A stretch of 60,940 nucleotides of DNA, counting the filler, from Sluysia triapertura (lineage: Eukaryota), in NCBI GenBank assembly GCA_046118255.1. It is 5 parts of 5 records of this genome, joined end to end, with 100 filler letters (N's around TTAATTAATTAA, not from the genome) between each part and the next. Parts side by side here need not be neighbours in the genome. Positions count along the whole stretch, not along the records: positions 1 to 12,080 come from JBJNIA010141281.1; 4 more parts are not named here. One strand, given 5' to 3'. The translations under genes and the position numbers were made by a program. Under the pieces are notes generated by a model. That model worked only from the letters and a program-made list of their open reading frames with translations. It made no database searches and was not told the DNA's origin. Positions 1-39,934 of this stretch are shown here, one piece after another. Each line of letters starts with the position of its first letter. Position 1 is the stretch's first letter.

Positions 1-149
1 TGCACACACTTTAAAAGCAGAAACGATTATGCAAAACATTGTCCTTATTTAATCCTCTAAAACAATATGCAACATGATCTGCTTAAGCCTGAGAAACTTG
101 CAGAAATACGAGCAGAGCCAATTGGTCTTAGGGGCGACGAAAGGGTTAA
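1..149. mobile_element. Probable piggyBac element right end
   Basis: Relatively GC-rich stretch ending AAAGGG-TTAA (146-149); similar ends at 21935-21944 and 36699-36708. Confidence 0.4.
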
Positions 150-150
150 A

Positions 151-196
151 CTGACTTTTAAACTGACTTTTAAACTGACTTTTAAACTGACTTTTA
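151..196 (+). repeat. 12-bp tandem repeat (ctgacttttaaa), about 4 copies
   Basis: Directly visible right after the TTAA at 146-149. Confidence 0.9.
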
Positions 197-529
197 TCGA
201 CAATTAAAAACTTTTTTCTGTACCACTTGTTATTTATTTAAAAATAAGTATAAATATATGAATATACATGCGACAAAATTCTGATTGTCGCAGCATTTCA
301 CGTTTATTCATTTATTTATTTCATTTTAAGAAATCTCTTAATAATTTCTTTTTCATTTGTCAAACTGTTTTCAAACAATTTTATTGCTTTCTTTATTTTT
401 TCGTTGAAATCCGACACAAACTTATGAATTGAGTCGCCACAACCTGTACCAGTAATTTATTGGATAAATTCAGACTTCCGTTTAATATTGTTGAGGATTT
501 GCTAAGTAAGTACAATATCCTGAAAATAA

Positions 530-1030
530 AATATAATAATATTGTGCTCATAAAAGTAAGTACTCATAAGTGCTTAAAATAAATCATTCACCATAATATT
601 TCTGAAACACAAAGTGTACTACCTTTTTCTTAAATATTTCATAATCTTCCAGTAATTTGACAATCTCTGGTAACTGGTTATATATTTTTGAAATATAAAC
701 GGTATTTAACTTATCAACTAGCTTATCATTGTGGATTCTGTACGGATATAATCATCTTCGTTTCTAAATTTATTATTATTTCTAAGAGATATTCAGGACC
801 TCCGTAATGTAAACATTTGTAAATTATTGTCATGATTTTGATATGCTTTTACTGGCAACCAATGTAATTCCTTGAGATAAAGTATTTCATGAGATCTTCT
901 TCCCACTTGCAGAATTAGTCTTGCTGCTTGATTAATTATTAATTGTAATTTTTTCACCTTTCTATATGAATTGAGTACAATAAACTTTTCAAACTTTTTA
1001 TTTCTTAAAAATAAGAAATCATTAAGCATT
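530..1030 (-). mobile_element. 3' fragment of an L2/CR1-clade LINE (ORF2 C-terminus plus 3' UTR)
   Basis: ORF 793-1029 has KKLQLIINQAARLI..H..LKELHWLPV, the L2 ORF2 C-terminal motif; its 3' UTR recurs at 11690-11830, 11995-12080 and 28155-28312. Confidence 0.85.
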
Positions 1031-1086
1031 ACGCATAGTTTTGAATTCGATTCCGTGTTACAACTTTAATTGGGTTAGTTTACTTT

Positions 1087-1880
1087 TGTTGGATTGCCAT
1101 CATAACCCTCTAAAATTATGAAAAATATTATTAAAATTTCTTTTAAATCATTTAAAAAATATTTTAGTGTTTCCAAATATCCAAAAAACATTTATTTTCC
1201 AAAAAAGAAAATAGAATTTCTAAAAGAGAAAATTTGCTTCTATAAAAAGAATAGAAGCTTCTAGAATGTTCTAGAACATTCTAAAACATTTCACAGATTT
1301 TCGTTGGCTGATGACTAGTATATAAGCTAGCATCATTTTAATGCACATCGCCATTTTATTTATACTGTTATTTTTACAATCCATAGCCATTTTTATCAAT
1401 AACACAATATTCATTATCAATTTTAATTACTGTCTATTTTCAAGAATTTTTGTCTAATATACTTGGTATCTGGAAACTATATTCGTCATCCATGTCCACG
1501 GTAATTTGTGTTTTATAAGGGAATTTTTATCTCGGAGAAATATTTTACATTATTTATTTTTTCCTCAATGTAAGGAGAGGAAATTATAATATTAAAATTA
1601 TTGACTAAATTAAATATTTCATTGAAATTTTAATTTTAATTATCTTATTTATAGTTTTACAAAAATTTTTGTTAATAAAAGTTCAGCAGTGTTTGCTATT
1701 TTTGATAAATTGAAACCCTCCAGAAGTTGCTAGGATAAGAGTTATTACTAAGATAAGTAATATTATTGACTTATTAGTTACAGAGGTGCCAACTATTAGT
1801 TGTAAGACGCTTACTGTAACCGGACCTTGCTCAATTTTATTTTGCCGTAGGTTTAGCATTAAGGAAAACCACAGTACTTT
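1087..1880 (+). mobile_element. TGT-initiated repeat (LTR-like or TIR arm), copy 1
   Basis: Starts tgttggattgccatcataaccct; shares the tagaagcttctagaatgttcta and ttagttacagaggtgccaac..gtaagacgctta blocks with 60110-60674 in inverted orientation. Confidence 0.6.
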
Positions 1881-2099
1881 TTGTTGTGTTAAATGTAATT
1901 GATTATTAAGTTTTGAATCAAATTGATAATATATATTACTTAATATATTATTTAAATATATTATTTTTTTTGTTTTTTAAAACTAAATCAAAAGATTTTA
2001 TTTTGTTGGAAAAAAAAGTAAATAAAGATTAAAAAAACATTTATTACGAATTATAAAAATATATAAAATTTTATTATTTATAGTATTTTCAGATGCAAA

Positions 2100-4525
2100 A
2101 AGCCGGATTCTGCATACTTTTTTCAATTGGCTATGTTCCCAATCTAAAAAGTAAATAAAATTCATAATGTTATAAGCATAAATAAAAGTATAGGATACTT
2201 GTTGTTTGTTTTGATTTCAGTGTAGCTAGTAGTTCGTAATAGAAGCTCTTTGAGCAGTCTGACTATTCTCGTTGATTGATGACTACAGAATGATCCAATG
2301 TTATTTTCAGATGTTAATTCATACGTGGTATGCGCGTAGGGAGTTTTATAATCATTATCATCATAATACTTAATGTAATTAATGCCATACTTACTTTCTT
2401 GCACTCGATGTTCAGCATCTTTAACATGCTTGACGTGATAACTATTTTCTTTATATTGTTCAAAATTAACACAATTATTTTTATGGTAGTTGACATGATT
2501 GTTGTATTCATTGTATGCTTTGATATTGTATTCATCGTCTTTACGGTCACAGTTATCGACGTAGCAAGGTTTAACATAAAAATCATAGTCTTTATAATTA
2601 TCATCTTATAGTCATCATTGTAGGTATCGTAAGAATTGACTTTATTGTTGTCATCTTTATAATAATCGTTACTGATATCATAACTATTAACTTTAAGGTT
2701 GTTATCTTTAAAATCATCATTAACGATATCATAAATATTAGCTTTAAGTTTAGCATCTTTATAATCATCATTATAGATGTTGCAAGTATTAGGTTTAATG
2801 TTGTCATCTTTATAATCATCATTGTTGGTATCATAAGTATTAAGTTTAATGTTGTCATCTTTATGATCGTCATTATTGATATCGTAAGTATTAGATTTAA
2901 GGTTATCATCTTTATAATCATCATTATTGACATCGTAATCTTTATATTTATATTGTTTAAAATGGTTATTATAACAATTCAAGTCCATTTTTGATTTACT
3001 GTTTAGGATAAATTGAAGCTGTTTTTTAATTTTCTTGTTCAGATTATGATTAATTGACATTAAAAATATAACTGAGAAAATTGTGATTAAAATTGCCTGA
3101 TTTAATTTTTATGTTACCAAATTTTGAAATTGAGTATAATTATTTGTGCCAAAAATAGACATTAACATTGTATTTAATATTGCGTTCTGATTGGTTGTTT
3201 AATAGTACTGATGAACTGTTTGCTAACATACACATAATGATGTTAAATTTTTAAACATCAATGTGATTTGTCGTCCAACCAGAGAAAAATAAAGTAGTGA
3301 TGATAACAACTTTGGTTGGACGACCAGTAATAATGTGCATGATGGAATGAGCGAGAGATAAGCTACCATCCATGTTGACATTGATTTATACACAGTGATT
3401 AGTTATGTCAACATGGATGACGATAATTGCTGATTTATATCAAAATTAAAATCTTTTTAAAAATAATTAATAAAAATATAAAATTAAAAATGATAGCAAT
3501 AATAATAATAACAGAAGTATCATCATTATTATTTTTATTACCACATAAATTCTTATTTCTTATGTTAACACGAACTTTTCTTTGATTTTCTTAATTTTCT
3601 GGACATATTTGAAATAATTAAAGAAAATTAAATATACAAATAATAATAAAAATTAAAAATAGTAACAATAATAATAATAACAAAATGTTATTTTCATTAT
3701 CATTATAAACACATAAATTCTTTAAAATCTTGAAGTTTACATGATCTTCCTTTATTCTTTAACCTTTCTAACATATAAAAGTATTGGATAATTGTGAATT
3801 TATAAAGTTTTAGTGTACCTAAACAACTTATTTTGTAGTTCTAAAGTTATGAGTTTGAATGTTGGAAGCTTATGATTTGAATATTTTAGAATAATATGAG
3901 TGTTTTGAATGAAATTGATTTGGTTGTTAGGCTTTAATGGTACAAGATCATGAATTTATAATGCTTGATTGTTATGGATATAGATGTTGATTAAATTCGA
4001 ATGTGATTGTGTTTGAAATTTATAAATGTGTAGCTTGGCGTATAAAAGTAGGTAAGTTATAGTCTAACTTCTGTATGTTCAGAAGGTGATTATACACTAC
4101 TGAATTGTAATTTAAATTGAATTGTTAAGAATGAAAATTAAAATATTTTAGATGGATTTCAATGTGATTTAATGGTTTAAGATGTTATTGTGGTTTGGAT
4201 GTTATGAGGTGTCGAATAAATATTTTTGATGAATCGCTTGATGTAGATTGATGGTATTATATGTTATGAGATTGTAGGCCTGCAGTATTCTGAAAAGTGA
4301 AAGTTTACCCTGATGGCTCTGAAGAGAAATAAGATATAAAAACCGTTGTGATGAATTTTACAAGGTTGTTGTATGTTATTAAAGAATATGATTTTAGTTT
4401 TGTTGGATTAATTTTAAGTAAATTTAAAAATGTGTATTGTGTATTTTGAAGGCTTATGTGGTTTTAATATATTTGGACTAGGCTTTTTAGTAAAATTTAT
4501 TAAGATTAATGGGTTGGCCACCACA
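2100..4525. mobile_element. Copy A of a dispersed ~2-2.5 kb element (DYKDD-repeat ORF, twin hairpins, AAT tract, GT-rich arm, terminus GGTTGGCCACCACA)
   Basis: Colinear with 38860-40798 (3940-4525 vs 40340-40798 closely similar) and with 31490-32560; left boundary approximate. Confidence 0.75.
2162..3060 (-). pseudogene. D/N/K/Y-rich tandem-repeat ORF (17-aa unit), one frameshift near 2605, ~300 aa if repaired
   Basis: About 6.5 copies of YDxxNDDYKDDNxKxNT (2605-2937, 51-nt period); the same composition continues in the frame of ORF 2162-2404. Confidence 0.5.
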
Positions 4526-4602
4526 TAAAGGATAGTTACATTAATCAAATAAGAATTATATAGTCATTCGAAGCAATAAAATATTTTTGGCTTCCGTAAC
4601 AT

Positions 4603-4822
4603 CGCGAATATTTAAGGCTAAAGATTCAAAAAATACTGCATGTGCAACTATCATGCAAAATTATATGAAACGTTGGATCTTTACGTTGTAGTAGATGTTG
4701 AAGGTAGAATAACTGGTAAAAGTTCTTCAAAATCCAATAATACTAATCCAAAATAAAACGAAAATGTCAATTTTGACTGTATGAATAATAGTGCATATTA
4801 TGAAGGTTTAATTATGTTTTAG
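4603..4822 (+). pseudogene. Decayed C2-domain fragment resembling novel PKC (epsilon/eta) N-terminus
   Basis: YLRLKI (frameshift) LDLYVVVDVEGRITGKSSSKSNNTNPK*NENVNFD vs LDPY..xVD..IG.T..K.KT..PxWxEEF; TAA at 4754-4756 sits at the conserved Trp. Confidence 0.5.
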
Positions 4823-7800
4823 TATGTAAATTTCACTATATTATATAGTTATTACACCAATCATTTAATAATAAAATTTTGTTTCTATTTTATTCGTTTT
4901 AGGACAGATATCCATCCATGCATAAGTTCTACTCTTCACCAACATTTAATTTGTAACAGATATTACAAACATCAGACAATATTACAATCTCATCTAAGTT
5001 CTTTACATCACTTAAATATGTTATAATATCATTTAAACCTTTGATTCATTAAAAATGCAAAAAAATATTCACATAAATTTGTAATAACGAAAGTGATGTT
5101 ACAAAATTTTGATATCTATCAGGGTGCTTATTTTGCGAAAAACTTTAAGTTAATATTGTGCAAATTCTGTAAAGCATTAAAATAAATTTTAAAATAAATC
5201 ATAAGATTTATTACATTAAACTTTTAAATGTTTCCGATTTTTGATTTTTTAATTGTGTTGAGTTGAAGTTTGAATTCACCACAGTAATAGTTACAATACT
5301 TAGTCAGAAAACCATGACTTATGGATTTCATAATCAAAGTTAATTTTCATGATGGACAAAATTCAGAAAAAAATGTTTTAGAAAAAATAATGTTCAAATT
5401 TAAAATAAAAAGAAAATAAAGTATTTCGCTTGATTTATTTAAATAAAATTTACTTAGTGGTTTATGATACCGTGTAGGTGACTGAGATATCTCTATTGTG
5501 ATTTTATTTTCTTTATGAAAATAAATTAAAAAAATGCGAAATCATAAATTCATTTGAAAACGTGTAATATATAAGTTCTAGACCACATGTTTGTTTAGAT
5601 CACTTGAAAGTTCAAAATACAATTAATTGAACATAAAATTTTATTAATTAACCTGTTTATTAGCACTGTTACATGTTAAATATCAAAAGTATCCTTAAAT
5701 AAAATAGATATTTTGTTTTAAAAGTTATTAAAGTTCATGTTGCAAAATAAAATTAACATTAAATTAATGCATTTAATTTTGTTATTTAATTATACTATCT
5801 TTCACAACAAGAATATAAAAGTCTAATTATTCCGAATATTTTTAAAGGCAACTTCTGAATTTTTATAGATACTAATTTCAAATATCTTCAAATCGATTAT
5901 ATAAAGCAATTAAAAATCATTTGCACATAAACTATAACATTATTGTACAAATTTCGAAAGCCTAAGGGACCCTAATCATCCACTATCTTTGGAATGATTA
6001 GAGCTCACGGTACTCCAAAAGAAATTGCAGGTTGACCGCCGTGCATTATGTTTTCTAAGTATAATGAAGTTTTAATCATTCAATTTATTCAATTTCATAT
6101 CTTACATAAAAAAGAAAAGGAAATCATTTGTAAAATTTCTTTCAACTTTCAACTTATATCTGTATAAACAAGTACTTATAAAAATAGCTTCCTTAATAAA
6201 CATATTTTTGATTCAAGCATTAAAAACATTTATCAATAGGTAGTCATCTTGATATTAATAAAATTATCTTGAATTTTTTTAATTCCTAATTTATAATTTA
6301 GTCTATTATTAATATACTTTCATTAAATTTCCAAAAAGAATTATTTGGCATTATGACAAGGATAGATTTAGATCAAAGAAAGTACGTGTTAAAGAAAGTT
6401 TTAAATATTTTATTTAAACTATATTACCATTTGACAGTGTACAATAATAAAAGAAATTTTTGATATTACAAAAACTGCCTTGGCGATAATGGTCATTGGA
6501 TTCATTATGAATATAATTGTGTCGAATTATTTACACCGCTTGTCCTTTATCTTAATGAAGCTGAGAAAATTCTATAGCTCTATTTTTCAACCGAAATAGC
6601 TCTGTTATTTCATAAGAAAATTAAAAAATTAACAGGTAATTAACAGATAATCGCACAAATATATTATACAGATTTTCAGGAATAAAGTTCAGTCAATAAA
6701 ACACAAAATTAATATTAATCATATTAATTAACACTTATGATAACCGTACAAAATTTTAGAAAAATATTTGAGTATAATTTCTAAAAATAATAATCAATTA
6801 AATGAAAGTAGAATTTACTGCCCTTATTATTAAATTCAAATATGCAATCTCATACCACTTCGTTATTAATATTCTACAACACATTATATCTGTAGTACAT
6901 TTTCGAGATAAAACAATTAAATGTTCAATAATTTTAACATATTTATCCTAAGTTCGATATTGAAAAAAATATAGTTTTTGTACTAATAATTACTTTGAAT
7001 ATCTATCAAAATTTTTATTTTAGCAATAAAATTTCTAACGTCTTTTTAAAGTAAAATGTCCCTTAAAAATTAAAAGGCTAAATTTTCATATTTGATATTC
7101 AACTGAAAATTTTCTAACTATAATGTAAATTAATGACTAAAATTACTTTAAATTTATATAATTAAAACTTGAAATTAATTTATAATTATTTAATGTAATT
7201 AATAAATATAAAGTTATTCATATGCATAATTTCTAAAATACGTCCTTAAATGTAATGCTTGAGTATAAGTTGTATGTATATCAAATGATTGAATGTTTGA
7301 ATTATAAATAAAATTTTATTTAACACAAAAATGAAATTAGCTCTAAAATCTCTCCATTTATTCTTGTTACAATATTAATATATTTAAAACTATTTTTATC
7401 GAAAGTGTCAAAAGACGCATTTTGAAATTACCACTTTACATTATTGTCATTATTTAATCGTTTTTCCTCAATTAAGTTTTTGACTTTTCTTATAGCGGCT
7501 TTTGAATTATTGGTATATTTTTTCTTCAATACCTTTATGGAGCTAAAAAAAAGTATTCAGAAAACCTATTCCTACCCTAAGATGCCTTTTGAGACCTTAA
7601 AAATTTTATAAAATTATGTAACCTTTACACACAAATATCAACTCCATTTCAATTATTACGAATCCTTGTTGTAGTTATTTCATTATAATTATATTTGAAA
7701 ATTTGGAATTGATAAGACCAAAGTCGAGCTATGAAATTTATTTCGTGCATATTTATTCATATTTATTATCGTAAAAAATTTGTTGAAATATTATAAATAC

Positions 7801-8109
7801 TTTTACATTGTAATTTATTTTTATTCTAATTTTTTTCTAATGATAGGGTTATCAAGAATGAAAAAAATTAAAGATGTATAGATAATATGGATAAATATCC
7901 TGGGACAGAATCACAATATGCAAGTGCAAATGAATTACGTGATTTTTTTTGAAAGTGATCGTAAAATCCATAGCGAATATTAAGAAAATATTTTGAATGG
8001 GTATAAAAATAAAGAGAATGCTAATGATAGATTCTGAGGATGAAGATAGTGAAGAAACCAGATAAATTTGGCACAAAAGCTAGTTTAAATGCCAGGAGTA
8101 AGAAGTGAA

Positions 8110-8330
8110 TTGAACCACTTCGTAGAGATTTTTTTATTCCAATTGGAAAAACTAGCAGGAATGTACCAAGAACCATTTCCGGAAAGAGAAAACCTTCAAG
8201 ATCTAGTAAAATCACTTCTACAAAAAGAAATAAAAGATGCCAAATAAAATGCTGTTCAGGTAACAGAGCAACTAAAATGTGCTCAGTATAAAAAATACAA
8301 ATACAGAAAATGTTTAGCATATCTAAAAAT
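8110..8330 (+). pseudogene. Decayed piggyBac-like transposase C-terminal cysteine-rich region
   Basis: LRRDFFIPIGK ... KRNKRCQIKCCSGNRATKMCSV* resembles the PGBD C-terminal RRxF..L / KRC..C..(K/R)T...C..C pattern. Confidence 0.4.
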
Positions 8331-8569
8331 TGTGATGGTAAGAAAGACGTATTTTTGTTATTTTTTTATTATTGCAATGATAAAATAATTACATATAAAA
8401 TTAAAGTTTATTTTTAACAATTATTTTCATGATATTTGCAAAAAAATAAAAAAGCTTTTGTTCTAAGTTAAAAAAGTGATATCTTCTTATTCACATTTTT
8501 TTTACTTTTGCAATAAAAAATAAAATTTACATTTTCAATAGCTCCTTATTTTCTTTAGAATATCTTAAT

Positions 8570-11314
8570 TTAATACAAACCTGTACTCAGATTTTCATTT
8601 TCTTCTAAGCGTATGTCTTTCTTTTCCTTGTCATTATCTTCGTCTTCGTCTTCGACTGCGCTTTCGTCTTCATCTTCATCTTCATCTTCATCTTCTTCAT
8701 TATCCTCAACTTCATCCTTACCAGAATACTGATTAATTATAGACATAGTCGAATCCCTTAATATTACCATACATTTATTTAGAGCTTCTCGGCCTGTATA
8801 AGTTTTATCAACATCAAAATTATCTTTAATTTTTTTAAAAATATTGTTCATAATCGTTCTTAAATCTGAAGCCAATTTTTCATTATCAATTTGCAATCTG
8901 TTATCTTTATTAGAGTTCAATTCTTGTTTTTTGTACATTTCTAAGTGTAACATCAAATTCGTTGATTTTGATTCTGCGTTTTCTAATTCAACAAGCAATT
9001 TTTCTGATTTATCTTTTAATGATGCATTTTCAGTTTCAATTTTTTGCAATTTATAGTGCAATTCATTAAATTGAGATAATTTCAATTGTGTTTCATTCAA
9101 ATCTTGTAATAATTGTTTATTATTATTTTTTACTGCTTCTAATTCTGAAAGAACATTCGCATTCGAGTATGAAACTTTTTCTCGTAATTCAAGCAACTCT
9201 CTGTTCGAATTCGATATTTCTACCATTAATTGATTGTTTCTTTCAGACAATTTGGTTATTTTTCCTGCTTCAGATTTTCTTAATTCATCAAATTGTATCT
9301 CCCAATCCCGAGTAAGGTTTTCAATTTCTTTATTTAAATCTGTATGCTTAGTAGATGACTTCTGACGCTCAACTTTTAATTTACGTTTCCATTCTTCTAT
9401 TTCATTACTGTGTTGTTCTCTTAATTCTTGGAGTTCTGAATCATATTCTTTGCGAACAATAATAATATTTTCATTCATTGTTGATATTTGCTTCTTTAAA
9501 TCTTCAATCTTTTGTATAAATTTGTTTTCTTTTGCTACAAAATCTTCCTTCAAAACATTAAATTCAGATTGTTTGTGACTATCAGATTTTTGAATTTCTT
9601 TCAAATCATTTAATTCTATAATGGTAGAATTGTGTTTTATCTTTAAATCTTGAAATTCTTCTGTCAATTTCGTAAGTTGTTCAAAATACTCAAGTGACTG
9701 AGACTTATACTTAGCAACATCCGAATGCAGGTTATCTACCTTCATTTGTGTGTCACTTAATTCAGATGTTTTTTGGCTTAAGCTTCTTATATATTTCAAT
9801 TTTTCTTCTTCTAATTCTAAAATTTTGTTGTGATGTTCAGTGACACTTGAACTTAAAGACACCGATTTACGCTCTAAAATACTATGACTATCATCTAAAT
9901 ATTGCTGATTTGTTTTCAATAACTCATTTATTCTTTTATTTAGAGACTCTATAGTACTAGATTTTTGAGAGCACTCATCTTTTAACGAATCATTCTCAAC
10001 AATAATTCGTTTAATATTATCATAAACATTTTCTGCATCCATATAACGACTAAGGCGTTTAGACGAAACTGCTGAAGAACCGGAATCTAATTTTTCCAAA
10101 ATCTTATCCAATTTATCTTGTAATTTACTTAATGCTATTCGAGTTTCAGTATTATTCTGCCGCGTTTCTGTAAACAATATGGTTAAATCATTATTACTTG
10201 ATTGTGGCAAAACCAAAGGAACAGTAGTAATACTAGGAGTGAAATTAGAATAAGTTTGATTATTTGATTGATATGGCAACAACTGGCTGCTCCCTACGAC
10301 ATACGAAGCATTATAATCGCTAACAGAAACATAAGGTGTTGTAATGACAGTCGATGGAATGGATTTAGTGGGAAAGGAAGGAGGATCATTTACAAAGTTG
10401 TCTGTACTATTGAAACCAACTATAGGTTTACCCATTTTTGCCATTCTCGATAACAATTCCGTTTTTTTTGATTCTTGGTCACTTTTATCAACATGTAAAT
10501 TTGAAACTGAAGCATCGGTATCTCCAAAATCAGGCAAATTAGGTCTTTCAACTTTTGATTTAAACCTTATTAATTTTATGTGCAAAAGCACATCTGTATC
10601 AGAAGGAATATCTACATTACTGGACTTTATCATAATACTTTTTGAAGATATTACAATAATTCTCCATCCACCTTTAGACATACCGACAGTAAGTTTATCG
10701 ATTACTGGTAATATTTTATTAGATCCTAATTTCAAACGTACTAACTTATTTTCCAAGTCATTTGTTGAATAAAGTGTGCGGGTAATTTCACCACTGGAAA
10801 TTGAATAAATGTTAATCTCCAATTCACATAAATCATTGTCACTACAACTACAACCTTCTCCTAATTTATAATCTACAGATACATATTCCTGTTTCGAAAC
10901 TACGAACTTACATATACATATTCGATTAAGAAAATCTCTTACAGATTCCGAAGAATCAAATATTACTGACCAATTGTCACTTTTGTTGTCATAAAAAGAC
11001 ACATAAGAATCTTTACTGCATGTAACATTAAAATCCAAATTTATATTACACTGAGTCACAGCTTGACTTCCTTTTGCATAAATTAAAATACTATAATTAT
11101 TTGTCTTAGATTCTAATAATGCAAGTCCGAGTTTGCCTTTATTTTCATATTTTCCATTAATCAATTTATAAGCATTAACTTGATAGGCTTTAAGCAAAGG
11201 ATTATTATTTTGACTAGTTCCTTTGATATTCTTCTTACTTACTGGAGTATCATTAGATGGAAGCAATTCATCTTCGCTAAAATTTGATGTGTGCATAAAT
11301 GTAGAATTAAACAT
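8570..11314 (-). CDS. FKBP15: FK506-binding protein 15 (FKBP15/WAFL) orthologue, 914 aa, single uninterrupted ORF
   Basis: N-terminal WH1/PH-like segment (KGKLGLALL..NYSILIY..SFYDNKSDNWSVIFDS); degenerate FKBP domain (RLKLGSNKILPVIDKLTVGMSKGGWRIIVI); family motifs LLSRMAKMGKP, TETRQNNTETRIALSKLQDKLD, NIKRIIVENDSLK; long coiled coil; IMNNIFKKIKDNF..YTG block; acidic tail. Confidence 0.93.
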   Translation of the reverse strand: MFNSTFMHTSNFSEDELLPSNDTPVSKKNIKGTSQNNNPLLKAYQVNAYKLINGKYENKGKLGLALLESKTNNYSILIYAKGSQAVTQCNINLDFNVTCSKDSYVSFYDNKSDNWSVIFDSSESVRDFLNRICICKFVVSKQEYVSVDYKLGEGCSCSDNDLCELEINIYSISSGEITRTLYSTNDLENKLVRLKLGSNKILPVIDKLTVGMSKGGWRIIVISSKSIMIKSSNVDIPSDTDVLLHIKLIRFKSKVERPNLPDFGDTDASVSNLHVDKSDQESKKTELLSRMAKMGKPIVGFNSTDNFVNDPPSFPTKSIPSTVITTPYVSVSDYNASYVVGSSQLLPYQSNNQTYSNFTPSITTVPLVLPQSSNNDLTILFTETRQNNTETRIALSKLQDKLDKILEKLDSGSSAVSSKRLSRYMDAENVYDNIKRIIVENDSLKDECSQKSSTIESLNKRINELLKTNQQYLDDSHSILERKSVSLSSSVTEHHNKILELEEEKLKYIRSLSQKTSELSDTQMKVDNLHSDVAKYKSQSLEYFEQLTKLTEEFQDLKIKHNSTIIELNDLKEIQKSDSHKQSEFNVLKEDFVAKENKFIQKIEDLKKQISTMNENIIIVRKEYDSELQELREQHSNEIEEWKRKLKVERQKSSTKHTDLNKEIENLTRDWEIQFDELRKSEAGKITKLSERNNQLMVEISNSNRELLELREKVSYSNANVLSELEAVKNNNKQLLQDLNETQLKLSQFNELHYKLQKIETENASLKDKSEKLLVELENAESKSTNLMLHLEMYKKQELNSNKDNRLQIDNEKLASDLRTIMNNIFKKIKDNFDVDKTYTGREALNKCMVILRDSTMSIINQYSGKDEVEDNEEDEDEDEDEDESAVEDEDEDNDKEKKDIRLEENENLSTGLY

Positions 11315-11689
11315 AAAAAGATGAGAATTAATGTAAAATAAATCAAAATAAATTAATATTATAAATGAAAAAAGTATAACATAATTTCGAATATTTGAAT
11401 ATCGTAAGTAAAAATCAAGAATTTATTCAAATTCATGAATGATTTATTTGATTTTAATGAAGGAATATTTCATATAAATATATTAAAACAATTTGTAAAA
11501 TAATTTTAAGATATTAAGGATAAGATTGCCACATTTAAAATTGAGATAAATACATTTGGAATAAATAACTAATAAATTGGTAAACTCTCAAAAGTCTTTC
11601 GAAATGTTACAAAACACTGTTAGATTTTCATAATGTCTGGTAATAATTTTGTTGGGTTGTGGGAAATTATGTGATTGTAAAGATATTAA

Positions 11690-11830
11690 TAATAATATTA
11701 TTATTTCACATTCCATTCATATCTACTGCAAAATACGTACTCAAAAACGCTTAAAATAAATCATTCACTATAATATTCCTGAAGCAAAAAGAACTTCGTC
11801 TTTTTCTTAAATATTTCATAATGTTGCTTC
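11690..11830 (-). mobile_element. L2 LINE 3' end fragment
   Basis: Matches 545-645 (gtactca..aa.gcttaaaataaatcattcac.ataat..ctgaa..tttttcttaaatatttcataat) and ends in a (TAT)n-type tail. Confidence 0.75.
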
Positions 11831-11994
11831 TTTGAAATTAATAGTAACAATAAATCAATATCAGTTTACTTTACTTAAATAGAATCTTAGTAATTTCAAT
11901 ATTCACTAAATCAAGTATAAATTACAGCAAATATTCTTATTTTATTAATAATATTAATTGTAAATATATATAATTAAATTTTAATGTATGTAAG

Positions 11995-12080
11995 TAATGT
12001 AAATTAATAATAATAATAATATATTAATTTATATTGCGCTTATATCTACCGCGAAAGTACTCAAAAGCGCTTAAGGTAAA
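11995..12080 (-). mobile_element. L2 LINE 3' tail at contig end
   Basis: attaatttatattgcgcttatatctaccgcgaaagtactcaaaagcgcttaa is the reverse complement of the 28250-28310 tail. Confidence 0.7.
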
Positions 12081-31489: not shown

Positions 31490-32560
31490 TGATGATCGGT
31501 GATTGGTCATCCAACCAAAAATGTTTGTTTGCAAAGTATTAAACTTCATTCTGGTTGGATGGCCAGTAATATGAGTAGAAAATTTATTAATTAATGTACC
31601 AACGCACAAGGGACAAACCACCATTCATGTTGACATTCATTTGGACATGGTGATTAACTATGTCAGCATGAATGGTGGTAATTTGCTGATTGATACACAA
31701 ATTTATTTCATTAAAATTAAAATGTCAATAATAAAAAGTATAATAATAAAATTAGTAATAATAATAATAGTATAACATAATAAAAGCTTGGCAATAATAA
31801 TAACAATAACAATATTGTTATTATTATTGTCAATATAAAAAGAAAATGCATAAACTTCTTTTCCTTGAGATTTAAACACGAACTTCCTTTAAATTCTTTA
31901 GATTTCTAGACATATTGGAAAAAAATTTAAAGTATATTTGAAACTGCAATTTCTGAATAGACTATTTTAAATGAATTTACATTCGTGATAAATGTTTTAA
32001 GGTATGGTAGTATTTCTAATGCAATGTAGTGAAATGTAGAACACTGGAATGAAATTTTAGGTATTGACTTATGTTTCTGATTAAGAGTGTATTTGAATAT
32101 TGGAAGATCGTGAATAAAAGACCTGTTGATAAGAGTCTGGTTTAATAAATGTGAAAGGTAAATTATAACGCAACTTTTAATTTGTTTGAAGTATTATTAT
32201 GAAATGTTTTATGTAATTTATTTATTTGTTGTTTTAGAAAGATATTGTATTGTGTTGTTGGTGACAATGCAAAGGCAAACGTTGAATTTAAGGTGTTATA
32301 ATTGATTCGAAAGTGTGAAATACATGATTTCAAATGTGGATATTATTTGGTTATTATGGATGTCGTGTTACATGTTTTTGGTGTAAGTCGATGGTATTAG
32401 ATGTAACTGTGGTTTGTATATTATGAGATTGCGAAAATGGCTTAGTCTAGGCAATGAACTGTTTTGTAAGTGTGTAGGATGTAAGTGTGTGAATATCAAA
32501 GTGTTGAAGATTTAATTAATTTTTTTTAAATTTTAACGGTTATAAAGGTTGTCCACTACA
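31490..32560. mobile_element. Copy B of the twin-hairpin element, more diverged, abutting the PolB relic
   Basis: Hairpins at 31500-31680, AAT tract, GT-rich arm, terminus ggttgtccactaca at 32560. Confidence 0.7.
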
Positions 32561-38859: not shown

Positions 38860-39934
38860 CGATCTTCTGTATGTGTCACCGTTTTCATGTTCTGTTCCAC
38901 TATCTGAAGAAAAACATTATTTATAATATTATTACAATGAGCAAGTGAATTAATTACTTCATGAAATTTCATAATAGATTTATTGCCAAAAACTAAGGCT
39001 CTCGTCTAATTCGTTAATTTCTGATTCGCAGGCCGTGTGGGTGTAACGACAATTAACTCCATTCTCATGCACACTCCATAATTATCTGTGGAGAATGAGC
39101 AAAAAGCGATGATTTTAGCTTTGTAAGCATCTTGTTTACTGACATTAATTTCGTGGTGATCATTGCTATCATCTTTATATTGTTCGACTTTATAATGATC
39201 ATCTTTATAGTGGTTAACATCATTACTACCATCCTTATATTCTACAATTCTATAATTATCATCTTTACAATGCTTAACATCGTTGCTATCATCTTTAAAT
39301 TCTTCGGCTTTATGATCATCATCATCATCATCTTTATAATGTTTAAACTCATTGTCAGCATCTTTATGATATGTAGCCACTTTATCATTTACTTTATTAT
39401 CTTTGTTGACATCATTATCGTTTATTGATTCTCTTTTGGTACCGAATTCTTCATGACATTTGGATTTAGGAGAAAACATGAATAAGTTTATATCATTTAT
39501 ATTCGAAGTCTTCACAAAATAAATTGAGCTGTTAAATTGTTGAAATTTTTCTGCCGGTCTGTTAAAAATATTTGTGATTTTTTAATAAGTTGCCAACTAT
39601 AATCTACTAAGAAAATCTTATAAATTCAACATGTTGACAGAAATAATTATGTTACATTGTAGTTGTGCATGTAACTCTTTTAACAAAAGCAATCGCTGAT
39701 TGGTCATTCAATCAACAGTGTTTTCATGATAATAGCAGTACTTGATGATTTGGCTGGATGGTCACTACAATTTAACAGAGGATGAAGAGAGACAAGCCAC
39801 CATCAATGTTGACATTTATTTATACACAGTGATTAGTTTTGTCAACATGGATGGTGGTGATTGCTGATTTATTTAAAAATTAATATTTAAAAATAAAATT
39901 AATAAAAATATAAAACTTTATTATAATATAAAAC

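What the first reader, a model, noticed from the sequence alone, without database searches (positions are those of the whole stretch)
3262..3422. Twin hairpins with compensatory base changes, conserved in three copies of a dispersed element
Seen: two long stems in the same order at 3264-3420, 31500-31680 and 39697-39860. Hairpin 1 is gtcgtccaacca..tggttggacgac (A) vs gtcatccaacca..tggttggatggc (B), a G-C to A-T double change. Hairpin 2 is catccatgttgacat..atgtcaacatggatg (A) vs cattcatgttgacat..atgtcagcatgaatg (B), a C-G to T-A double change. The hairpin 1 loop diverges freely. By my count most non-Watson-Crick pairs are G-U when read on the + strand, antisense to the neighbouring repeat ORF. 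Inference: structure is under selection in + strand RNA or ssDNA, e.g. an element-borne pre-miRNA-sized pair (each about 60-70 nt) or a replication/packaging signal.
Basis: partly seen in the sequence, partly recalled or inferred. Interest (0 to 1): 0.75.

Follow-up and report, generated by a model that had tools for sequence, protein, structure and literature searches.

The report
Twin DNA palindromes in mobile repeat
Two real, unusually strong hairpin-forming palindromes lie next to a 51-base tandem array in AT-rich animal DNA; they look more like structural signals of a non-coding mobile repeat than microRNA genes, and the claimed compensatory changes could not be checked because no other copy is reachable.

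Summary
Both hairpins exist as described. H1 has arms 3270-3284/3310-3324: 15 bp, one G.T, 25-nt loop. H2 has arms 3367-3381/3405-3419: 15 perfect bp, 23-nt loop. They are the two most stable folds in the 12-kb piece and are not chance.

The other two copies lie outside my piece. No relative turned up in viral, metagenome or prokaryote-genome scans, or in two protein collections. The covariation claim, the core of the finding, is therefore untested.

What could be tested argues against a pre-miRNA pair:
- The stems are too short and too perfect.
- There is no lower stem under H2.
- No Rfam family reaches threshold.
- As DNA, both strands fold equally well.

The 'repeat ORF' is probably a by-product of a 51-nt array. 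Three of six frames are open, there is no third-codon-position excess, one frame change, and no homologue.

One new observation: a 13-nt inverted copy of H2's outer arm plus flank lies at 1483-1495 (composition-weighted p about 0.005). Together the two would bracket a 1.94-kb unit holding the array. That layout resembles DINE-1/HINE non-autonomous rolling-circle elements, whose stems are also reported to keep pairing through compensatory change. The fit is partial.

Verdict: a real structure, most likely a transposon-borne DNA signal. Modest interest.

The parts
3270..3324 (.). Hairpin/palindrome H1: 15-bp arms (one G.T on the + strand), 25-nt loop; 12-bp core is 58% G+C in 25% G+C DNA
3325..3366 (.). 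42-nt linker between the two palindromes
3367..3419 (.). Hairpin/palindrome H2: 15-bp perfect arms, 23-nt loop
3411..3423 (-). Outer arm of H2 plus 4 flanking bases: right member of a 13-nt long-range inverted repeat (candidate subterminal inverted repeat)
1483..1495 (+). Left member of the 13-nt inverted repeat: exact over 13 nt, 15 of 17 with flanks. It has no partner arm and no stem-loop beside it
1483..3423 (.). Candidate element span (1.94 kb) bracketed by the 13-nt inverted repeat. Inferred only: boundaries are not confirmed by other copies
   Evidence: inference
2345..3009 (.). Tandem array of a 51-nt unit. 6.6 clear copies at 2598-2938 (79% matches, no indels); degenerate copies extend to about 2345
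2162..3060 (-). Broken once by a change of reading frame, with no stop inside either frame piece. Probably not a gene
3430..3433 (+). CTGA followed by T, ending 14 nt after H2. A lead for a Helitron-type 3' end; weak
3436..3775 (.). Neighbour: two tandem units of about 170 nt, each with an A-rich half. The array starts just after H2

Best explanation
H1 and H2 are DNA-level palindromes belonging to a non-coding, non-autonomous mobile repeat of about 1.9 kb (candidate span 1483-3423) that carries a central 51-bp tandem array.

H2 is made of a subterminal inverted repeat and an adjacent internal inverted copy of it. H1 is a second subterminal palindrome that shares the 8-nt base motif GTCRTCCA.

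By analogy with DINE-1/HINE (Helentron-type) and Helitron elements, such palindromes would act when the element's DNA is single-stranded or bound by its partner's Rep/transposase, marking where copying starts or stops.

Their arms stay complementary because the hairpin, not the sequence, is what is recognised, and/or because replication template switching copies one arm onto the other.

Shown: the palindromes, the array, the 13-nt inverted copy, and the absence of coding signal.
Inferred: mobility, the boundaries, the class of the element, and the mechanism.
For: Strength and symmetry:
- The palindromes are the two strongest folds in the piece.
- As DNA they fold equally on both strands, -13.6 to -14.4 kcal/mol.

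The long-range inverted repeat:
- A 13-nt exact inverted copy of H2's outer arm plus flank lies at 1483-1495.
- A composition-weighted match this good arose in 5 of 1000 Markov simulations.
- The 13-mer is found at 2 sites with up to 2 mismatches allowed, against 0.18 expected.
- GTCRTCCA occurs 4 times against 0.16 expected.

Concerted arms or a young copy: H2's two arms are identical to each other (15/15), yet the left copy matches them at only 11 of 15 arm positions.

The array and the ORF:
- A 51-bp tandem array lies between the two repeat members.
- Three of six frames are open across it.
- Variable columns by codon position are 12/9/11.
- There are no homologues and no Pfam family.

Boundary: a different tandem repeat begins within about 15 nt of H2's end, consistent with an element boundary there.

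[quoted passage not shown] They also have a stem-loop whose stem sequence changes while pairing is kept (PMC2374699; PMC4067079; PMC7492417).
Against: - Only one copy could be seen, so copy number, boundaries and insertion sites are unknown.
- The 13-nt match is modest evidence and was found post hoc.
- There is no stem-loop beside the left repeat member, although DINE-1/HINE elements have one after the 3' subTIR.
- The arms (15 bp) and loops (23-25 nt) are larger than the published 5-11 nt stems.
- H1 has no counterpart in the published layout.
- There is no target-site duplication beyond a trivial TA.
- No Rep/helicase, transposase or other element protein is present in the piece.
Confidence: 0.4

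Rival explanations
1. The palindromes have no function. They are young or self-correcting products of replication template switching (quasi-palindrome correction) in a recently duplicated, repeat-rich segment. The 'compensatory' double changes are single mutational events that copy one arm onto the other.
For: - The arms are perfect or nearly so (29 of 30 Watson-Crick pairs), as expected from templated copying.
- Template switching is documented to create perfect stems and multibase compensatory changes without selection (PMC8794818; PMC5453318).
- Three other loci in the same 12 kb fold at -20.7 to -22.2 kcal/mol, so this genome makes palindromes readily.
- Tandem duplications surround the site.
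Against: - Two strong palindromes 42 nt apart share a base motif, and a 13-nt copy lies 1.9 kb away. That suggests a reused motif rather than two independent accidents.
Confidence: 0.2
2. The hairpins are 3'-terminal RNA stem-loops of a non-LTR retroposon (SINE-like, or a 5'-truncated LINE) transcribed from the + strand. The partner LINE's reverse transcriptase recognises them, and an A-rich tail follows.
For: - The 75 nt from 3440 are 60% A, in the top 0.2% of the piece.
- + strand RNA folds 2-3 kcal/mol better per hairpin through G.U pairs.
- Stringent-type LINEs need a 3' stem-loop (PMC4176376).
- The genome does carry LINE remains (the repeats).
Against: - The A-rich stretch is half of a 170-nt unit that is tandemly duplicated, not a clean tail.
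- No reverse-transcriptase ORF or remnant lies upstream on the + strand.
- Published LINE stem-loops are shorter.
- The inverted 13-mer at the far end is not expected of a retroposon.
Confidence: 0.12
3. The hairpins are cis-regulatory palindromes about 200-360 nt upstream of a multicopy, intronless gene for a tandem-repeat protein on the - strand. The whole unit (promoter plus gene) was duplicated.
For: - On the - strand a CCAAT-box-like sequence (around 3190-3200) and AT-rich TATA-like sequence lie between the hairpins and the ORF's first ATG.
- An AATAAA lies about 110 nt after the stop.
- The ORF is 248 codons as it stands.
Against: - Three of six frames are open over the array.
- There is no third-codon-position excess.
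- The ORF has one frame change.
- No relative was found by word search or by full HMMER search of 1.84 billion representatives.
- No Pfam family matches.
- 15-bp arms with 23-25 nt spacers are unlike usual factor sites.
Confidence: 0.1
4. The hairpins are a structured RNA gene: an element-borne pair of miRNA-like or other small-RNA precursors on the + strand.
For: - The two hairpins are each about 55 nt, or 60-70 nt with flanks, and sit close together.
- The + strand is slightly favoured.
- The only weak Rfam similarities are to miRNA hairpin models.
Against: - All Rfam hits are far below gathering score (23 against 65, 18.7 against 97) and occur on both strands.
- H2 has no lower stem and only 15+5 bp.
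- H1 reaches 27 bp only across a 7-nt asymmetric loop.
- Canonical animal precursors need about 33-35 bp of imperfect stem (established knowledge).
- As for an H/ACA reading, the stems have no internal pockets, and no H box or ACA box sits in place.
Confidence: 0.07

Closest known systems
DINE-1 / HINE (non-autonomous Helentron elements of insects, mites, bivalves)
   Same: - A short subterminal inverted repeat pair (13 nt here; 11-15 nt published).
- An inverted copy next to one subTIR.
- A central tandem array with a unit of 50-500 bp.
- No real coding capacity.
- Hairpin stems reported to keep pairing through compensatory change (PMC2374699, PMC4067079, PMC7492417).
   Different: - No stem-loop next to the other subTIR.
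- Arms and loops here are two to three times longer.
- There is an extra palindrome (H1).
- TT insertion, copy number and the autonomous partner could not be examined.
Canonical Helitron 3' end
   Same: A palindrome followed, 14 nt later, by a CTRR end (CTGA) and a flanking T. This lies within the published 10-15 nt distance (PMC2267711).
   Different: - The published palindrome is 16-20 nt in all; here it is 53 nt with a 23-nt loop.
- The CTRR+T coincidence has about a 7% chance over the four hairpin ends tested.
- The 5' TC end could not be located.
- Helitrons lack inverted repeats at their ends.
3' tail stem-loops of stringent-type LINEs and their SINEs
   Same: An element-borne stem-loop close to an A-rich stretch, with the structure recognised by the element's enzyme (PMC4176376, PMC1636434).
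   Different: - No reverse-transcriptase gene on that strand.
- The tail-like stretch is part of a tandem duplication.
- A far-end inverted repeat is present.
Mitochondrial double-hairpin elements (chytrid fungi, Schizosaccharomyces)
   Same: Dispersed units that fold into two adjacent hairpins, richer in G+C than an AT-rich background, and thought to be mobile (PMC10085805).
   Different: Those are mitochondrial, much shorter and over 75% G+C. This locus is nuclear (next to an FKBP15-like gene and LINE remains), 150 nt long, and its arms are 40-58% G+C.
Transposon-derived miRNA hairpins (for example MITE-derived precursors)
   Same: An inverted-repeat structure carried by a repeat family (my own knowledge; not tested by a named hit).
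   Different: Those hairpins have long stems of 30 bp or more formed by the whole element. Here there are two short perfect stems with large loops.

Membership tests
Animal pre-miRNA (canonical) | Imperfect stem of about 33-35 bp (about 22-bp upper plus about 11-bp lower stem) flanked by single strands | tested here: not met
   H2 has 15 bp plus a 5-bp inner extension and no lower stem. H1 has 27 bp in all, across a 7-nt asymmetric loop.
Animal pre-miRNA (canonical) | Match to a curated miRNA family | tested here: not met
   No hits at E<=1 over the piece. In a focused scan the best hit scored 23 bits against a gathering score of 65.
Animal pre-miRNA (canonical) | Discrete 21-23 nt products from both arms | not testable with these tools
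   No expression data, and the organism is unidentified.
DINE-1 / HINE (Helentron non-autonomous) | Pair of 11-15 bp subterminal inverted repeats | tested here: inconclusive
   13/13 exact inverted match between 1483-1495 and 3411-3423, p about 0.005. Only one copy was seen, so terminal position is unproven.
DINE-1 / HINE (Helentron non-autonomous) | Inverted repeat complementary to the 5' subTIR close by | tested here: met
   The inner arm of H2 is 15/15 complementary, 23 nt away. Published spacing is 1-22 nt.
DINE-1 / HINE (Helentron non-autonomous) | Central tandem repeats, unit about 50-500 bp | tested here: met
   51-nt unit, 6.6 clear copies, with degenerate copies beyond.
DINE-1 / HINE (Helentron non-autonomous) | Stem-loop a few nt after the 3' subTIR | tested here: not met
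   DNA folds of 1405-1500 and 1478-1570 are no better than shuffles.
DINE-1 / HINE (Helentron non-autonomous) | Insertion between TT without duplication; many copies with the same ends | not testable with these tools
   No other copy or empty site is reachable.
Canonical Helitron | 3' CTRR end 10-15 nt after a palindrome, with host T next | tested here: inconclusive
   CTGA at 3430-3433 followed by T. Chance is about 0.018 per hairpin end, and four ends were looked at.
Canonical Helitron | Palindrome of 16-20 nt | tested here: not met
   H2 spans 53 nt with a 23-nt loop (definition).
Canonical Helitron | 5' TC end after host A | tested here: inconclusive
   The published maize 5' pattern was found only once, on the other strand at 7892. 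Animal 5' ends differ, so this says little.
Stringent LINE/SINE 3' tail | Stem-loop just before a tail of A or short repeats at the element's 3' end | tested here: inconclusive
   An A-rich stretch starts about 20 nt after H2, but it belongs to a duplicated 170-nt unit.
H/ACA snoRNA | Hairpin, H box, hairpin, ACA, with internal pockets in both hairpins | tested here: not met
   The stems are perfect, without pockets. There is no ANANNA after H1, and ACG rather than ACA follows H2. No Rfam hit.
Mitochondrial double-hairpin elements | Mitochondrial location, over 75% G+C, very short | tested here: not met
   Nuclear context. Arms are 40-58% G+C.

The most novel reading that the evidence does not exclude
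A so far undescribed kind of nuclear mobile module in an animal genome. Its twin hairpins would be kept by selection on + strand RNA and processed into small RNAs, or used as a packaging or replication signal. It would be a nuclear analogue of mitochondrial double-hairpin elements, or a transposon-borne small-RNA pair.
Probability: 0.07. Interest if true: 0.6.

Novelty: new member of a known kind. Interest (0 to 1): 0.25.

Why it matters
If the best reading holds, this is one more lineage-specific, non-autonomous DNA element whose ends are recognised by shape. That is useful for annotating the repeats of a poorly sampled, AT-rich animal genome, and as a caution: 'compensatory' changes in transposon palindromes do not imply an RNA gene. 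It would matter more only if many copies showed phylogeny-aware covariation together with strand-specific small RNAs.

Tried and rejected
Searches for other copies:
- Exact look-up of both window proteins in the contig index found nothing on record.
- Word search with the repeat part and with the other frame piece of the ORF gave 0 hits.
- A full HMMER search of 1.84 billion representatives gave 0 hits.
- H2 pattern in viral contigs gave 0 matches. H1 pattern in metagenomes gave 0 matches.
- A looser H2 pattern gave 10 metagenome loci and 7 prokaryote-genome loci. All were unrelated chance palindromes with 32-69% G+C and no further similarity.
- A loose H1 pattern in viral contigs gave 116 or more chance matches. 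None had the 12-bp arms and none gave a blastn hit.

Organism: the FKBP15-like protein's best relative is only 42% identical, with fish and mussel at about 26%. The source lineage is not in the collections.

Are H1 and H2 duplicates of one unit? Local alignment was not significant (422 of 2000 shuffles did as well). Only the 6-8 nt base motif is shared.

A 1.6-kb tandem unit (2012-2228 against 3612-3821): score 39 against a shuffle mean of 29 and maximum of 47, so rejected as low-complexity similarity.

Other checks:
- tRNA scan found none.
- Target-site duplications: only 2-nt candidates.
- GTCRTCCA with one mismatch shows no clustering.
- Pfam on 27 further open segments: nothing at threshold.

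Full report
Context. The usable piece (1-12080) is about 25% G+C and looks like nuclear DNA of an animal.
- An intronless 914-codon ORF at 8570-11314 (-) matches the Pfam FKBP15 domain. It also matches FKBP15 of fishes and a mussel at about 26% identity over more than 90% of its length.
- Its best relative anywhere is only 42% identical, so the source lineage is poorly sampled.
- A short ORF at 793-1029 (-) looks, from my own knowledge, like the C-terminal tail of a non-LTR reverse transcriptase; no Pfam family matched it. About 100 nt lying downstream of it on that strand recur at 11697-11837 and 12020-12080.
- The N run after 12080 was left untouched.

The observation.
- H1: arms 3270-3284 and 3310-3324. 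14 Watson-Crick pairs and one G.T. Loop 25 nt.
- H2: arms 3367-3381 and 3405-3419. 15 perfect pairs. Loop 23 nt.
- 42 nt separate them.
- As RNA, the 176-nt region folds at -54.8 kcal/mol on the + strand and -46.7 on the - strand, both more than 5 sd below shuffles.
- As DNA, each hairpin folds at about -14 kcal/mol on either strand.
- A perfect 15-bp stem arose in 1 of 100 shuffles of the piece. A second G+C-rich stem within 100 nt makes chance negligible (my inference from those counts).
- In sliding 70-nt folds the two rank first and second. Three other loci (1231-1300, 246-315, 5951-6020) come within 2-4 kcal/mol, so strong palindromes are not rare in this DNA.

What could not be checked. 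The other two copies are outside my piece, and the piece holds no second twin-hairpin copy.
- Exact look-ups.
- Two word searches and one full HMMER search with the neighbouring ORF's two frame pieces, searched apart.
- Pattern scans of viral, metagenome and prokaryote-genome collections.
Everything returned was either nothing or chance palindromes in unrelated bacterial or viral contigs. Even taken at face value, two double changes in three copies are too few for a covariation test. Replication template switching is documented to produce exactly such paired changes and perfect stems without selection (PMC8794818).

The miRNA idea.
- No Rfam family is hit at E<=1 over the piece.
- A focused, permissive scan gives only generic hairpin similarities far below gathering scores, on both strands.
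- Geometry is wrong for a canonical animal precursor. H2 is 15 bp plus a weak 5-bp inner helix with no lower stem. H1 reaches 27 bp only across a 7-nt asymmetric loop.
- An H/ACA reading fails too: there are no pockets and no H or ACA boxes in place.
- The + strand preference rests on one G.T in H1 and two predicted G.U in H2's inner helix.

The 'repeat ORF'. The ORF at 2314-3060 (-) overlies a 51-nt tandem array with 6.6 clear units and degenerate ones out to about 2345-3009.
- Three of the six frames are open across the array.
- Variable columns fall 12/9/11 on codon positions 1/2/3.
- The reading continues to a stop near 2162 only after one change of frame.
- Neither piece has any relative or Pfam family.
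I take it to be a by-product of the array, not a gene.

New evidence on what the hairpins belong to.
- The 8-nt base motif shared by both hairpins (GTCRTCCA) occurs four times in the piece against 0.16 expected. The fourth site, at 1485, extends to a 13-nt exact match (1483-1495) with the reverse complement of H2's outer arm plus its 4 flanking bases (3411-3423).
- By length alone this is unremarkable in AT-rich DNA: 32 of 300 simulations did as well. Weighted by composition, only 5 of 1000 did.
- H2's two arms are identical to each other, while the left copy matches them at only 11 of 15 arm positions. So the arms either evolve in concert or the inner arm is young.
- The two 13-mers are inverted. 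They bracket 1.94 kb that contains the tandem array, H1 and H2. An unrelated 170-nt tandem duplication begins within about 15 nt of the right end.

Comparison with known elements. The layout is a subterminal inverted repeat, an inverted copy right next to one of them, and central tandem repeats with no coding capacity. That is what is described for DINE-1 and other Helentron-derived non-autonomous elements. The DINE-1 paper also notes a stem whose sequence changes while pairing is kept, and proposes that it terminates rolling-circle copying.

The fit is partial:
- No stem-loop lies beside the left repeat.
- The arms and loops are larger than published.
- H1 has no counterpart.
- Insertion sites cannot be examined.

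Other leads:
- Canonical Helitron end: CTGA followed by T ends 14 nt after H2 (definition). It has about a 7% chance over the four ends inspected, and the palindrome is far larger than the defining 16-20 nt.
- Retroposon: the most A-rich stretches of the piece follow H2. However, they are halves of the duplicated 170-nt unit, and no reverse-transcriptase remnant lies upstream on that strand.
- No Rep, transposase or reverse-transcriptase domain was detected anywhere in the piece.

Verdict. The structure is real and non-random.
- Best reading (confidence 0.4): DNA-level palindromes of a lineage-specific, non-autonomous mobile repeat. It resembles DINE-1/HINE without meeting all of that family's defining features.
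- Neutral template-switch palindromes (0.2) and a retroposon tail (0.12) remain open.
- A small-RNA gene is unlikely (0.07).
Novelty is that of a new member of a known kind.

Conduct. The conservation lines printed by the alignment tool were not used. The only external pattern used was copied from PMC2267711.

Noticed in passing
window 8570-11314 (-): Intronless 914-codon FKBP15-like gene with an acidic repeat tail (hexamer array 8637-8695). The best database relative is only 42% identical, so the source animal lineage is barely sampled.
   Followed up: partly
window 520-660, 11697-11837, 12020-12080: Three copies of a roughly 100-nt dispersed repeat. The first lies just downstream (on the - strand) of a reverse-transcriptase-tail-like ORF at 793-1029. 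The last two are 320 nt apart, and the third is cut by the piece's edge. Probably LINE/SINE 3' ends.
   Followed up: partly
window 1216-1300: Another cluster of adjacent palindromes: an 8-bp stem, then a loop-less 10+10 palindrome at 1259-1286. It folds at -22.2 kcal/mol and lies about 190 nt outside the left 13-nt repeat.
   Followed up: no
window 246-315 and 5951-6020: Two further strong hairpins (-21.5 and -20.7 kcal/mol in 70 nt), unrelated in sequence to H1 and H2.
   Followed up: no
window 146-196: Perfect 12-nt tandem repeat, 4.2 copies.
   Followed up: no
window 3436-3775: Two tandem units of about 170 nt (roughly 65% identical), each starting with the most A-rich stretch of the piece (60-68% A).
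   Followed up: partly
window 4001-4500: Strong strand asymmetry: GC skew +0.585, G/T-rich on the + strand, with no ORF and no repeat found.
   Followed up: no
window 8089-8244 (+): Short 52-codon ORF with ordinary protein-like composition just downstream of the FKBP15-like gene's end. No Pfam match.
   Followed up: partly
window 3258-3269 and 4159-4170: A 12-nt exact direct match of the bases just before H1. It is within the range expected by chance in this AT-rich DNA.
   Followed up: partly
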